From Salpingoeca rosetta (lineage: Eukaryota; Protista; Choanoflagellata), in contig JAWQFM010000018.1 of the NCBI GenBank assembly GCA_033442325.1, forward strand, positions 1,099,515 through 1,163,514: 64,000 nt of DNA, in the 5' to 3' direction. The translations under genes were made by a program, and so were the position numbers. The notes beneath the pieces were generated by a model that saw nothing but the letters and a program-made list of their open reading frames with translations, had not been told where the DNA came from and did not search any database. Position 1 is the stretch's first letter; each line of letters begins with the position of its first letter. Shown here one piece after another: positions 11,400-14,300 of the stretch.

Positions 11400-14300
11400 C
11401 TACGGGTTGACAATGGTGAGCGAGACATCGTCCACGTTGACCTGCAGGCGGCGGGCGGTGTTCTCAAACTCAACGGTGACAGAGTTGAAGGCGCTGTGTT
11501 CCGCAGTGACAAAGCCAACAACGGAGAGCTCCACAAACTCGCCGCGAATGACGTCCGTCTCCAGGACGCGGCGCGAGCTGATGAGCATGCGAGCATCACC
11601 CTCGCCAGCGTACACCTTCGCCTCCATCTGCAAGAAGCGGTCCTGGTCCTGGCGCCAGCCAACGCGGAAGGTCATGGTCACCTCGGCAAGCGTGATCAGC
11701 TCAACGTCGCTGACCACCTGGCTGATGGCACTGTTTGCGTTGACAAAGGCGACGTTGTTGCCCTCGGGCGCGCCGTCGGCGTACTCGGCCGCAGATGGGT
11801 GGAACACGCCGGAAACGCCAGAGACAACCCAGTCCGTGATCACCGTCTCAAAGTCGCCCTCGTTCGCAAGAACCTGCGACTCAAAGCCCGTGTTGCCCAG
11901 AGGAACACTCACAAACTCCGTGGTCGTGGAGGTCGACGACGACGTGGAGGTCGAGGTGGAGGAAGACGTGGACGTGGACGACGAGGTGGATGTGCCCGTG
12001 GTCGTGTCCAGCGACACATCCACGCTGATGTTGTCAATGCCGACCTGCTGGCGGTCAGCAGTGTTGGTGATGACAAGGCGCAGGCGCTCGCCCCAGAGCT
12101 CAGGGCCAAAGTCAACCACGTCAACCGTCACAGCAGCAAAGTCGCCAGGGCCAAGGCCAGTGAAGAAGAACTCGGTTACCTTCGCGCTGGCAACCAGCTC
12201 CTGACTCTCCTCAGCGTACACGTCAAGGTCCGCCTGCAGGAAGCGGTCGTAGTCCGCGCGCCAGCCGACGTTCACCGCCACCTGCACGTGCACCTTGTCG
12301 CCAAGACGCACGCCCTGCAGCAGCTGCCACGCGCTCGCCCCCGCGTTGAGGTACAACACCTGGTCCTGGTCCGGCACGTTGTACTCGCCGTTGTTGGGGA
12401 AGAAGGTGCCAGCCTGGCCAGAGAGCGCCCAGTTGTCCGCAGCCGCAATGAAGCCGCCAGCGCTCAGCTCGTTGTCCTCAAAGGATGGGTTGAACACGGA
12501 TGGAGGAACAAAGGGTGTTGTCGTGGTCGTCGTGGAAGAGGACGACGATGTTGACGTCGAAGTCGATGTGGACGTGGAAGTCGACGATGTCGTGCTTGTG
12601 GAGGTCGAGGTGCTGGTCGAGGTGGAGGACGATGTGCTGGTGGACGTGGAGGTTGAAGTTGAGGTTGAGGTGCTCGTGGACGTGCTCGTGCTGGTTGAGG
12701 TTGAGGTTGAGGTGGAGGTAGACGTGCTTGTGGACGTCGACGTAGAGGTGGAGGATGAGGTAGACGTGCTGGTGCTGGTAGAGGACGACGTCGAGGACGA
12801 TGTGCTCGAGGTCGTCGACGTGGAGGTGGAGGTGGAGGTCGATGTCGACGTGGATGTGGAGGTGGAGGACGTGGTTGATGTAGAGGTGGAGGTTGACGTG
12901 GAGGTGGAGGTGGATGTCACCGTGGTCACGTACTCACGCTTGCACATGTACGAGCGGCGGCGCGTGCAGGGAAGCTCCTCCCACTCGCCGTTCTGGGTGT
13001 TCTGCACAAGGCACGCGCCTGGCGTCGTCGCAGACGCAGCAAGCGGCCACCCAAAGTCAACCGCCTCGCTGCCGTCAACCCACTCAATACTCGCGCCATC
13101 GTCGGTCAGGTGGGCACCCAGCCACACCTGGTTGTTGGTCGTCGAAGCACGAATCACAACAAGCACAAAGTCAAGCTCCGCCTGCGACAGCACGCTCACC
13201 AGCGAGCCATCCCACTCGTCAACGCAGTAGGCCCACGCCTCGTCAAACGTCACCTTCTCATCAACATACTGGTACAGCGACCCATCAAACACGGCAACGC
13301 CAGGCTCAACAGTGCGGAACAGCGTGCTGGTGCTTGTCGACGTCGACGTCGACGAAGACGTGGAGGAGGAGGTGGATGTCGTGGTGGATGTCGACGAGGA
13401 AGTCGACGACGACGACGAGGTGGATGACGACGACGAGGTGGTCGTGGACGTGGACGACGATGTGGAGGAAGACGTGGAGGTGGATGACGATGAGGACGTC
13501 GAGGTCGAGGTCGAGGACGACGTGGACGACGAGGTTGATGTCGTGCTGCTGCTGCTCGTGGAGGTGGACGACGAGGTGGAGGTAGAGGTCGAGGTCGAGG
13601 TGGACGACGATGTGGTGAAGGCGTTGCGCTTGCAGATGAAGCCACGCAGGGACTGGCAGCCAAGGTCGGCCCATGTGCCGTCACGCTCGTCCGTGGTGCC
13701 CGTGTTGAAGACAACGCAGAACTGGTCGCCATCAAAGTTGTTGGGCTCACCCTCCTCCCATGGCAGCGGCCACAGGCGCGTCGTACGGCCGTCCTGCCAC
13801 CAGATGCTGTCGTGGGCCTCGTTGAACTCGGCGCCAATCCACAGCTGGCGCAGGTCTGTCGTCTTGGGCACAATCTGGCGCAGGAACGTCTGCTCCTCGG
13901 CGTCCAGGATGGTGGCGAGGTAGCCGTCCTCAGCTTCGCAGCTGGCCTGCGCATCATCCTGCGACTGCTTGTCCTGGATCACGCGGAACTCAAAGTTGCC
14001 AAACTCGGTCCACTCTGGTGTCGTTGTCGAGAACGATGATGGGAGGGTCCAGAGAAGAGGGAGCAGAGGAGAGGGTGTGTGTGTGTGTGTGTGTGTGTGT
14101 TTCGGGTGAGCAAGGGGGTGCATCGGAAACGTCAGAGAAACAGGCGGTGCGCGCATACAGACGACAATAAAGCAACACGAGCGTACAGACAACAAGTGAA
14201 CGCGTGCATACGAGACAAAGTGAAACATCACAGCTCCAAGAGCAGTTGCATGCATGCATGCATGCATGCATGCATGGTGCCATTCTCGCAGATGAGTGAG

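What the first reader, a model, noticed from the sequence alone, without database searches (positions are those of the whole stretch)
11400..12500. Two C-terminal repeats of the secreted lectin look like bacterial Stig-cyclase (HpiC1/FamC)/CBM-like beta-sandwich domains
Seen: two ~165-aa internal repeats, FNPSFED..W..GTFFP..Y..VPDQDQVLYLN..Q..VNVGWRAD..GDF..LRLVITN..VGIDNISV and VPLGNTGFES..W..GVFHPSAAEY..APEGNNVAFVN..Q..FRVGWRQD..GEF..VEFEN..VNVDDVSLT. Knowledge, recalled from memory: cyanobacterial hapalindole cyclases have the same motif order (IPINNAGFE..W..APEGRNIGYI..EQ..VDVG..GEF..IRLIN..LDFDNVRLT) in a Ca2+-binding jelly roll. Inference: a bacterial-type domain, possibly acquired horizontally, has been fused to animal-type C-type lectin domains and mucin stalks. 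The position matching the catalytic Asp (L-D-F-D-N) is G or N here, which suggests a binding role (glycan or bacterial small molecule/lipid) rather than catalysis. This could name the 'repeats of unknown function' of Rosetteless-type proteins.
Basis: partly seen in the sequence, partly recalled or inferred. Interest (0 to 1): 0.85.

Follow-up and report, generated by a model that had tools for sequence, protein, structure and literature searches.

The report
Choanoflagellate lectin ends in HpiC1-like modules
The two C-terminal repeats of this secreted, mucin-like C-type lectin of Salpingoeca rosetta really are calcium-type beta-sandwich domains of the HpiC1/Stig-cyclase family, but of a non-enzymatic kind shared with bacterial surface proteins, and they are not the unexplained repeats of the Rosetteless protein.

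Summary

- **The repeats.** They lie at window 12003-12515 and 11403-11921 on the minus strand, and are 32% identical (E 3e-22).
- **Family.** Each passes Pfam PF22825 HpiC1-like (42 and 60 bits, cut-off 27).
- **Fold.** AlphaFold models (pLDDT 95.7 and 97.4) match Stig cyclases first (Z 21.7), and CBMs next.
- **Residues.** The CBM-type Ca2 ligands are kept. The catalytic Asp214 position is G or N. The cyclase-specific Ca1 site is absent. A binding module is therefore far likelier than an enzyme.
- **The gene.** It encodes a 1417-aa secreted protein with four CTLDs and mucin stalks. Two of its three introns are seen spliced in run contigs.
- **Not Rosetteless.** The genome is S. rosetta. The real rtls gene lies on another contig. 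Its C-terminal repeats are short Cys-rich units with no HpiC1-like signal.
- **Family size.** S. rosetta has at least 21 six-frame matches, and Monosiga brevicollis also has the domain. The nearest relatives are bacterial PEP-CTERM surface proteins.
- **Transfer.** Choanoflagellate-type and bacterial copies separate cleanly on the tree. Any transfer was ancient, and its direction is unresolved.

The parts
11400..16373 (-). Whole gene: four exons encoding a 1417-aa secreted, S/T-rich (43%) protein. Order: signal peptide, T-rich stretch, (CTLD-A, mucin, CTLD-B, mucin) twice, R1, mucin linker, R2, stop.
   Evidence: The conceptual splice gives one open frame of 1417 codons with GT..AG at all three introns. 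Introns 1 and 3 are seen removed in contigs of runs X11 and X13. Intron 2 is inferred from the sequence and from the parallel with the duplicated half.
16085..16373 (-). Exon 1: start codon, signal-peptide-like N-terminus (MKLASMLAVLVVAALAASVSS) and a T-rich stretch.
   Evidence: The signal peptide was judged by eye; no predictor was run.
15447..15791 (-). CTLD 1 (type A, with an EPN motif) in exon 2 (15185-15835).
   Evidence: Pfam Lectin_C, 68.3 bits.
14660..14965 (-). CTLD 2 (type B) in exon 3 (14311-15009).
   Evidence: Pfam Lectin_C, 50.2 bits.
13626..13970 (-). CTLD 3 (type A, 77% identical to CTLD 1), in the last exon (11400-14014).
   Evidence: Pfam Lectin_C best stretch, aa 100-214 of the ORF. 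The duplication is shown.
12930..13295 (-). CTLD 4 (type B, 50% identical to CTLD 2). The bounds are approximate.
   Evidence: Second Lectin_C stretch and the alignment to CTLD 2.
12003..12515 (-). Repeat 1 (R1), an HpiC1-like beta-sandwich domain of 171 aa. The position matching catalytic Asp214 is Gly (codon 12039-12041). The Ca2-site Asp is codon 12033-12035.
   Evidence: PF22825 at 42.1 bits, E 1.3e-10. AF2 model with pLDDT 95.7. The top 28 Foldseek PDB hits are all Stig cyclases, best E 3.3e-10. A bacteria-only profile scores it 83 bits.
11922..12002 (-). S/T-rich linker between the two repeats, a probable O-glycosylated stalk.
   Evidence: Sequence. Glycosylation is inferred.
11403..11921 (-). 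Repeat 2 (R2), an HpiC1-like beta-sandwich domain of 173 aa, followed by the stop codon at 11400-11402. Ca2-site residues: E14 (codon 11880-11882), E53, D164 (codon 11430-11432). The position matching Asp214 is N162 (codon 11436-11438).
   Evidence: PF22825 at 60.1 bits, E 3.8e-16. AF2 model with pLDDT 97.4, pTM 0.91. The top 26 Foldseek hits are Stig cyclases. VIA-align gives Z 21.7, rmsd 2.0 A over 166 residues to 6a8x. A bacteria-only profile scores it 97 bits.

Best explanation
The window holds a Salpingoeca rosetta gene for a 1417-aa secreted, heavily S/T-rich (mucin-like) protein with four C-type lectin domains. Its C-terminus carries two tandem-duplicated beta-jelly-roll domains of the Pfam HpiC1-like family.

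What the domains keep and lack:
- They keep the structural calcium site that Stig cyclases share with carbohydrate-binding modules (the Ca2 site: E14, E/D53, D164 in R2 numbering).
- They lack the catalytic Asp214 of the cyclases.
- They lack the cyclase-specific Ca1 site.

The same signature (R90, Q160, often N162) is found in bacterial PEP-CTERM and other surface proteins, which are their nearest relatives.

Shown: the fold, the family, the residue pattern, the gene structure, and the fact that the gene is not rosetteless.

Inferred: the two modules act as non-enzymatic, Ca2+-stabilised ligand-binding units. The ligand is most probably a glycan, possibly an anionic polysaccharide of the choanoflagellate matrix or of bacteria. 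The modules would be held at the end of glycosylated stalks and, together with the four CTLDs, would make a multivalent extracellular cross-linker or capture protein.

The domain is an old, expanded building block of choanoflagellate extracellular proteins. It was not recently acquired by this gene.
For: - Repeat similarity: E 3e-22.
- Pfam PF22825: 42 and 60 bits against a cut-off of 27.
- A profile of 15 S. rosetta copies finds only Stig cyclases significantly in the PDB (3.6e-6 to 1e-3). The next hit is a GH31 CBM-like region at 0.027.
- Models have pLDDT 97.4 and 95.7.
- Foldseek places Stig cyclases first for both repeats, then CBMs.
- VIA-align gives Z 21.7 to 6a8x. It then gives a porphyran-binding CBM at Z 17.1, an alginate-binding CBM at 14.6, and CBM16 and CBM4-2 at about 14.
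- Residue mapping (alignment; residue roles in bioRxiv 10.1101/173674, and PMC9063808; column counts):
  - D216 matches the invariant D164, and E39 matches E14.
  - E95 matches E in R2 and D in R1.
  - D214 matches N in R2 and G in R1.
  - N137 matches W, and E/D175 matches R in R2 and P in R1.
  - Ca1-type ligands co-occur in 0 of 29 choanoflagellate-type rows and 35 of 92 bacterial rows.
- PMC9063808 states that Ca2 is shared with beta-sandwich CBMs and that Ca1 is unique to Stig cyclases.
- Nearest relatives:
  - P0117 has PF22825 at 113 bits plus a PEP-CTERM anchor.
  - The best ESM-atlas shape match is a bacterial PF22825 + PEP-CTERM cluster, TM 0.85.
  - A profile built from bacterial rows alone scores the repeats 83 and 97 bits.
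- Gene model and splicing. CTLDs.
- Family size and partner domains: 21 matches in the genome. A paralogue has a CTLD plus three copies. Another gene has five copies plus FG-GAP repeats.
Against: - No ligand, calcium binding or localisation has been measured. The binding role rests on loss of catalytic residues and on fold neighbours.
- Three aromatic residues of the cyclase pocket are conserved (HpiC1 W73, Y89, Y101 match W31, Y47, F59). A small-molecule pocket is therefore not excluded.
- The two raw RNA-seq runs examined show almost no reads over the repeats. Expression may be low or stage-specific.
- No CBM family of Pfam matches by sequence.
- The bacterial relatives themselves have no demonstrated function.
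Confidence: 0.72

Rival explanations
1. The repeats are active Stig-cyclase-like enzymes that cyclise a small molecule, for example an indole-terpenoid or another hydrophobic substrate, outside the cell.
For: Stig cyclases are the closest solved structures. The pocket aromatics W73, Y89 and Y101 have equivalents.
Against: [quoted passage not shown] It is G in R1 and N in R2. It is D in only 1 of 29 choanoflagellate-type rows.
- The Ca1 ligands N137 and E175 are needed for activity. They are absent in all 29 choanoflagellate-type rows.
- F/L138 is replaced by a near-invariant Arg.
- The domains sit on mucin stalks beside lectin domains, not in a biosynthetic cluster.
Confidence: 0.03
2. The modules are protein-protein association units. 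Like the dimeric, Ca2+-bridged Stig cyclases, R1 and R2 would pair with each other or with copies on other molecules and so polymerise the lectin into a matrix, without binding glycans themselves.
For: HpiC1 is a homodimer through beta-strand pairing. It also shows Ca2+-dependent higher-order association. The copies in S. rosetta genes come in tandem sets of 2 to 5.
Against: CBMs of the same fold are monomeric. The repeats are separated by a flexible S/T linker. No interface was tested, because no complex prediction was run.
Confidence: 0.15
3. The domain entered this gene by a recent horizontal transfer from bacteria. It would be an intronless bacterial cassette fused to animal-type domains.
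For: The nearest relatives outside choanoflagellates are bacterial. Both repeats lie in one long exon.
Against: - There are 21 matches at many loci with deep divergence, about 20-30% identity between paralogues.
- Some copies are split by introns.
- Monosiga brevicollis XP_001750656.1 has copies that fall among the S. rosetta paralogues.
- Holding all 29 choanoflagellate-type rows together gives a better tree (lnL +48.7, p-AU 0.90).
- R1 and R2 are each other's sisters, which indicates a tandem duplication in place.
Confidence: 0.04
4. The repeats are the same as the RP1/RP2 repeats of Rosetteless, so the window gene is rosetteless or a direct homologue in that respect.
For: The general layout is the same: signal peptide, CTLDs, S/T stretches and two C-terminal repeats (PMC4381721).
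Against: - The rtls crRNA and repair-oligo sequence from PMC7314544 matches G000:C7:750503-750532, not this contig.
- The last exon of rtls carries two Cys-rich repeats, 48% identical. It has no Pfam hit, and the best HpiC1-like score with filters off is 7.8 bits.
- rtls has two CTLDs and 12 exons. This gene has four CTLDs and four exons.
Confidence: 0.02

Closest known systems
Stig cyclases (HpiC1, FamC1, FilC1, FisC, HpiU5) of Stigonematalean cyanobacteria; Pfam PF22825 HpiC1-like
   Same: - Same Pfam family, above cut-off.
- Same flattened beta-jelly roll (Z 21.7, rmsd 2.0 A over 166 of 173 residues, 24% identity).
- Same motif order.
- Same Ca2 calcium-site ligands.
- Conserved W, Y and F/Y at the positions of W73, Y89 and Y101.
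   Different: - No catalytic Asp214 (G or N instead).
- No Ca1 site (W and R/P in place of N137 and E/D175).
- Arg instead of F/L138, and Gln instead of G212.
- About 30 residues shorter in the loops.
- Found in tandem, in a eukaryotic secreted mucin-lectin, instead of as a free dimeric enzyme in a biosynthetic cluster.
Bacterial HpiC1-like surface proteins. These include small PEP-CTERM (exosortase-sorted) proteins of about 210-230 aa, and large proteins with Ig, LamG_3, RHS or FG-GAP domains.
   Same: - Nearest sequence relatives. A bacteria-only profile scores the repeats 83-97 bits.
- Shared signature: NxSFE, GW, (D/E)GxNVAF, VGxRxD, GxF, QxNFDNV.
- The Asp214 position is usually N.
- Extracellular, and often present in several tandem copies.
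   Different: - The bacterial proteins end in a PEP-CTERM anchor or carry bacterial partner domains.
- 35 of 92 bacterial rows keep Ca1-type ligands, against none of the choanoflagellate-type rows.
- Their function is also unknown. The only hint is a weak, sub-threshold likeness to the flocculation protein PepA.
Beta-sandwich carbohydrate-binding modules (CBM4-2, CBM16, CBM22, CBM61, and the porphyran- and alginate-binding CBMs 8xmz and 8zqf)
   Same: Same fold (Z 14-17), the same structural calcium site (Ca2), and an extracellular role in appended, repeated modules.
   Different: No sequence-level membership: no CBM Pfam family is hit at E up to 10. The CBM ligand-binding residues could not be compared. 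Sugar binding is not shown.
DUF642 (PF04862), found in plant cell-wall proteins and bacterial PEP-CTERM proteins
   Same: Language-model neighbours (0.92-0.94). Some clusters carry both DUF642 and HpiC1-like annotations. Both are extracellular and associated with polysaccharide matrices.
   Different: Pfam DUF642 itself does not hit the repeats. It is a sister family, not the same one.
Rosetteless (Rtls) of S. rosetta
   Same: Same organism and the same general design: a secreted protein with CTLDs, S/T-rich stalks and two C-terminal repeats.
   Different: - Different locus (C7 against C18).
- Two CTLDs against four.
- 12 exons against 4.
- Its C-terminal repeats are Cys-rich units of about 45-58 aa, unrelated to the HpiC1-like domain.

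Membership tests
Pfam PF22825 HpiC1-like domain | Score above the curated gathering cut-off (27 bits) over nearly the whole model. | tested here: met
   R1 scores 42.1 bits (model positions 3-172 of 174). R2 scores 60.1 bits (3-174 of 174). The six-frame genome search gives 41.5 and 59.5 bits at the same places.
Pfam PF22825 HpiC1-like domain | Flattened beta-jelly-roll fold with a Stig cyclase as the closest solved structure. | tested here: met
   For R2, the top 26 Foldseek hits are Stig cyclases (8.6e-12 and weaker; TM 0.75-0.83), and VIA-align gives Z 21.7. For R1, the top 28 hits are Stig cyclases.
Pfam PF22825 HpiC1-like domain | Ligands of the Ca2 structural calcium site (HpiC1 E39, E95, D216). 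| tested here: met
   R2 has E14, E53 and D164. R1 has E, D and D. D164 is invariant in 121 rows, and E14 is present in 120 of 121. Metal binding itself was not measured.
Stig cyclases (enzymes) | Catalytic acid Asp214, strictly conserved. D214A is inactive. | tested here: not met
   The aligned residue is G in R1 and N in R2.
Stig cyclases (enzymes) | Ca1 site side chains N137 and E/D175, which are unique to Stig cyclases and needed for activity. | tested here: not met
   The aligned residues are W and R in R2, and W and P in R1. None of the 29 choanoflagellate-type rows has both ligand types.
Stig cyclases (enzymes) | Tyr89, hydrogen-bonded to Asp214. | tested here: inconclusive
   Y is present in both R1 and R2. 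However, Y or F is common at this column throughout the non-cyclase relatives, so it does not discriminate.
Stig cyclases (enzymes) | Homodimer through beta-strand pairing. | not tested
   No complex prediction or experiment was done.
Carbohydrate-binding modules (CAZy CBM families of the beta-sandwich type) | Sequence membership in a CBM family. | tested here: not met
   No CBM Pfam family is listed at E up to 10 for either repeat.
Carbohydrate-binding modules (CAZy CBM families of the beta-sandwich type) | Demonstrated carbohydrate binding. | not testable with these tools
   Only fold likeness is available (Z 14-17 to several CBMs).
Rosetteless RP1/RP2 repeats | Lies in the rtls gene. | tested here: not met
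   The rtls guide and repair-oligo sequence maps to G000:C7:750503-750532. The window is C18:1099515-1163514.
Rosetteless RP1/RP2 repeats | Sequence homology to the C-terminal repeats of Rtls. | tested here: not met
   The Rtls repeats are Cys-rich and 48% identical to each other. They have no Pfam family. HpiC1-like profiles score at most 7.8 bits on the six-frame translation of the locus with filters off.
Bacterial PEP-CTERM HpiC1-like proteins | C-terminal PEP-CTERM sorting signal. | tested here: not met
   The protein ends with the domain itself (...VSLTIVNP, then stop). No PEP-CTERM hit was found.

The most novel reading that the evidence does not exclude
The choanoflagellate HpiC1-like modules keep the aromatic pocket of the cyclases (W31, Y47 and F59, matching HpiC1 W73, Y89 and Y101). 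In this reading they use it to bind hydrophobic bacterial molecules rather than sugars, for example the sulfonolipid or other lipid cues that control rosette formation and other S. rosetta behaviours. The expanded family would then be a set of extracellular receptors for bacterial signals.
Probability: 0.05. Interest if true: 0.9.

Novelty: new member of a known kind. Interest (0 to 1): 0.5.

Why it matters
It gives a name, a confident 3-D model and a testable function to a domain that recurs in choanoflagellate extracellular proteins. There are at least 21 six-frame matches in S. rosetta. They occur together with C-type lectin or FG-GAP domains there, and with EGF/TSP1 or CHRD domains in related environmental sequences.

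The same module is used by bacteria on exosortase-sorted surface proteins. This is relevant to how the closest relatives of animals build a matrix and deal with bacteria.

It also corrects a tempting error: the unexplained repeats of Rosetteless are something else and remain unexplained.

No paper in the searchable library mentions HpiC1-like or PF22825 at all. The domain assignment follows from an existing Pfam model, so the advance is annotation plus context, not a new kind of system.

Tried and rejected
- **Word-indexed protein searches.** All three gave almost nothing. R2 alone and the 29-row alignment each returned only P0001, a TARA metagenome fragment 77% identical to R2. The whole ORF with region 585-955 returned nothing, probably because S/T words filled the candidate list.
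- **Taxon names.** Cluster look-ups gave a taxon name for only one relative, Monosiga brevicollis. The wider eukaryotic distribution could not be established.
- **Single-sequence phmmer against the PDB.** It was only marginal (0.044 to 1.5). The profile search was needed.
- **NCBIfam.** It has no model for the repeats.
- **Pfam on whole S/T-rich ORFs.** It lists only Lectin_C and omits HpiC1-like. I suspected the bias filter. However, a profile of my own finds both repeats in the full protein with and without that filter, so the cause is not established.
- **Raw RNA-seq runs X21 and X22.** They gave practically no reads over the repeats, and many partial S/T-repeat matches. They neither confirm nor exclude expression.
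- **Earlier notes of the scan.** They held only a second reading of the same stretch.
- **Complex prediction of R1 with R2.** Not run, because I do not claim that they bind.
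Full report
**What is there**

The minus-strand ORF 11400..14267 ends in two repeats. R1 is window 12003-12515 and R2 is window 11403-11921. A short S/T linker separates them. They align end to end at 32% identity, E 3e-22.

**Family and fold**

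- Cut out, each repeat passes the curated cut-off of Pfam PF22825 HpiC1-like over almost the whole model. R1 scores 42.1 bits and R2 scores 60.1 bits, against a cut-off of 27.
- Single-sequence searches of the PDB are only marginal.
- A profile of 15 copies from this genome (alignment A1) finds thirteen distinct Stig-cyclase sequences at 3.6e-6 to 1.3e-3. The next hit, a GH31 CBM-like region, is at only 0.027.
- AlphaFold2 was run with alignments of 121 and 89 sequences. It gives models of pLDDT 97.4 (R2, pTM 0.91) and 95.7 (R1), with the same strand order.
- Foldseek ranks 26 (R2) and 28 (R1) Stig-cyclase chains first (E down to 8.6e-12, TM 0.75-0.83). Carbohydrate-binding modules follow.
- An all-against-representatives structural search gives Z 21.7 to 6a8x (rmsd 2.0 A, 166 residues, 24% identity). 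Next come a porphyran-binding CBM (Z 17.1), the CBM-like part of an arabinanase (15.2), an alginate-binding CBM (14.6), and CBM16 and CBM4-2 at about 14.

**Catalytic and metal residues**

The HpiC1 paper (bioRxiv 10.1101/173674) and the FamC1 calcium paper (PMC9063808) define the following:
- The catalytic acid is Asp214, strictly conserved. D214A is inactive.
- Its partner is Tyr89.
- The Ca1 site (N137 and E/D175 side chains) is unique to the cyclases.
- The Ca2 site (E39, E95/N98, D216) is shared with beta-sandwich CBMs.

I mapped these through the profile alignment and counted columns in the 121-row alignment:

| HpiC1 residue | Role | R2 | R1 | Family-wide |
|---|---|---|---|---|
| D216 | Ca2 site | D164 | D | invariant in 121 rows |
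| E39 | Ca2 site | E14 | E | 120 of 121 rows |
| E95 | Ca2 site | E | D | D or E in 15 of 29 choanoflagellate-type and 83 of 92 bacterial rows |
| D214 | catalytic acid | N | G | D in 1 of 29 choanoflagellate-type rows |
| N137 | Ca1 site | W | W | see below |
| E/D175 | Ca1 site | R | P | see below |
| F/L138 | pocket | Arg | Arg | near-invariant Arg |
| G212 | – | Gln | Gln | near-invariant Gln |

Ca1-type ligands co-occur in 0 of 29 choanoflagellate-type rows and 35 of 92 bacterial rows. The domains therefore keep the structural calcium site of CBMs and lack what makes a Stig cyclase an enzyme. Aromatics at the positions of W73, Y89 and Y101 are retained, but they are retained throughout the non-cyclase relatives as well.

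**The gene**

- Upstream on the same strand lie a signal-peptide exon and two further CTLD exons.
- Contigs of two public runs remove 15836-16084 and 14015-14310, with GT..AG on the minus strand.
- A third intron (15010-15184) follows from the sequence and from the parallel with the duplicated half.
- The four exons give one frame of 1417 codons. The order is: signal peptide, T-rich stretch, CTLD-A, mucin, CTLD-B, mucin, CTLD-A', mucin, CTLD-B', mucin, R1, linker, R2.
- S plus T make up 43% of the protein.
- All four CTLDs pass Pfam Lectin_C.
- The CTLD pair is an internal duplication. The A copies are 77% identical and the B copies 50%.
- There is no membrane anchor at the C-terminus.
- Raw reads of two RNA-seq runs barely touch the repeats. 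Expression in those samples is low or absent.

**Not Rosetteless**

- The genome is S. rosetta. The rtls guide and repair-oligo sequence from the supplement of PMC7314544 matches exactly once, at G000:C7:750503-750532. It does not match in the window, which is C18:1099515-1163514.
- At that locus the CTLD exon carries the edited site.
- The last exon, just upstream of a neighbouring gene, holds two Cys-rich repeats between threonine runs. They are 48% identical to each other (E 6e-18).
- That exon has no Pfam family.
- HpiC1-like profiles score at most 7.8 bits on the six-frame translation of the locus with all filters off.
- These Cys-rich units fit the description 'two high-complexity internal repeats near the C-terminus' in PMC4381721. 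I could not see the figure that aligns them.
- The suggestion that the HpiC1-like domain names RP1/RP2 is therefore not supported.

**The family in choanoflagellates and beyond**

- PF22825 has 21 six-frame matches above cut-off in this genome, on seven contigs.
- A neighbour 68-80 kb away on the same contig combines a CTLD with three copies. A gene on C21 has five copies plus FG-GAP repeats.
- Some copies are interrupted by introns.
- An exhaustive profile search of 1.84 billion representatives gives 4082 proteins at E up to 1e-3 and 1299 at E up to 1e-10.
- The best per-domain scores belong to sequences that look eukaryotic:
  - P0096, with TSP1, EGF_CA and TNFR domains.
  - P0063, with CHRD and EGF domains.
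  - P0023, with FG-GAP and malectin domains.
  - TARA and other aquatic metagenome fragments.
  - One named protein, Monosiga brevicollis XP_001750656.1.
- Just below them come bacterial proteins:
  - PEP-CTERM proteins of about 210-230 aa (P0117: PF22825 at 113 bits plus a PEP-CTERM anchor).
  - Large surface proteins in plainly bacterial gene neighbourhoods.
- The best shape match in the ESM atlas is a bacterial PF22825 + PEP-CTERM cluster, TM 0.85.
- A profile made from the 92 bacterial rows alone recognises R1 and R2 at 83 and 97 bits.
- In one bacterial phylum sampled, 8 of 101 genomes have the domain above cut-off.

**Origin**

- In a maximum-likelihood tree of 121 domains, R1 and R2 are sisters (SH-aLRT 93). 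This indicates a tandem duplication in place.
- The M. brevicollis copies fall among the S. rosetta paralogues.
- All PEP-CTERM and other bacterial rows sit in one large group.
- Forcing the 29 choanoflagellate-type rows to one side of a branch gives a better tree than the free quick search (lnL +48.7; p-AU 0.90). One caveat applies: the group was partly defined after seeing the tree and by profile likeness.
- The family therefore diversified before the two sequenced choanoflagellates split.
- A recent bacterial insertion into this gene is very unlikely.
- A single ancient exchange between bacteria and the choanoflagellate lineage is compatible with the data. Its direction and date cannot be read from an unrooted tree without taxon labels.

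**How it most likely works**

Shown: two Ca2-site-bearing, non-catalytic beta-sandwich modules sit at the free end of a secreted protein. The rest of that protein is four CTLDs separated by long S/T stalks.

Inferred:
- The modules bind a ligand, most probably a polysaccharide. The reasons are that the fold neighbours after the cyclases are CBMs (several for anionic marine polysaccharides), that a near-invariant Arg and Gln replace hydrophobic cyclase pocket residues, and that the bacterial relatives are sorted to the surface by the exopolysaccharide-associated PEP-CTERM system.
- With six potential binding units on one flexible, glycosylated chain, the protein would cross-link matrix components or capture bacterial surfaces.

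I put about 0.95 on the fold and family assignment, and about 0.6 on a glycan-binding role. The alternatives are an oligomerisation module, a small-molecule or lipid pocket, and residual catalysis. They are listed with their tests.

**Verdict**

The gene is not rosetteless, and the Rosetteless repeats remain unexplained. The horizontal-transfer idea is open but cannot be recent. This is a new member and context of a known domain family, and it appears to be unreported in the literature I could search. It is moderately interesting for choanoflagellate matrix biology.

Noticed in passing
G000:C7, locus L021 5709-6662 (minus): The last exon of the real rosetteless gene holds two Cys-rich repeats (C..LTCYYRD..C..D..C..DA..FCIP.P..CT). 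They are 48% identical, flanked by long threonine runs, and have no Pfam family. They are probably the published RP1 and RP2 and remain unexplained.
   Followed up: partly
window 11403-14267 (minus) and L031 4038-7223 (minus): Pfam hmmscan of the whole S/T-rich ORFs reports only Lectin_C and omits HpiC1-like. The cut-out repeats score 42-64 bits. A profile of my own finds them in the full protein with or without the bias filter, so the cause is unclear. Routine annotation may miss the domain in such proteins.
   Followed up: partly
G000:C18:1031038-1034223 (L031 4038-7223, minus): A paralogous gene 68-80 kb from the window gene combines a C-type lectin domain with three HpiC1-like copies. Its domains are the closest relatives of R1 and R2 in the tree.
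   Followed up: partly
G000:C21:1160038-1165998 (L032 4039-9999, plus): A very long ORF holds five HpiC1-like copies, FG-GAP (integrin-alpha-like) repeats and mucin stretches. A metagenomic relative (P0023) has HpiC1-like, FG-GAP and malectin domains.
   Followed up: no
L003 (G000:C5:1772232-1775753) and L009 (G000:C21:1158787-1162311): Some HpiC1-like copies are split between separate ORF pieces (profile positions 6-46 and 53-164). This indicates introns inside the domain.
   Followed up: no
window 12930-15791 (minus): The CTLD pair is internally duplicated. The A copies are 77% identical and the B copies 50%. Type A has the EPN motif but W-I/A-D in place of WND. Type B lacks EPN.
   Followed up: partly
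window 11300-16500: Two 2026 RNA-seq runs show almost no reads over the gene apart from S/T-repeat cross-matches. Older run contigs carry the spliced form at low depth.
   Followed up: partly
ESM atlas clusters (no window coordinates): A giant-virus (Nucleocytoviricota) cluster with DUF642, PAN_1 and WSC domains matches the R2 model at TM 0.78. Bacterial relatives P0087 and P0117 weakly resemble the flocculation protein PepA (33-39 bits, cut-off 80).
   Followed up: no
window 8600-10000, 19600-21900, 24500-26900: Long (TG/CA)n and similar microsatellites fill the intergenic and intronic DNA. They generate many spurious C/V-rich or H/T-rich ORFs.
   Followed up: no
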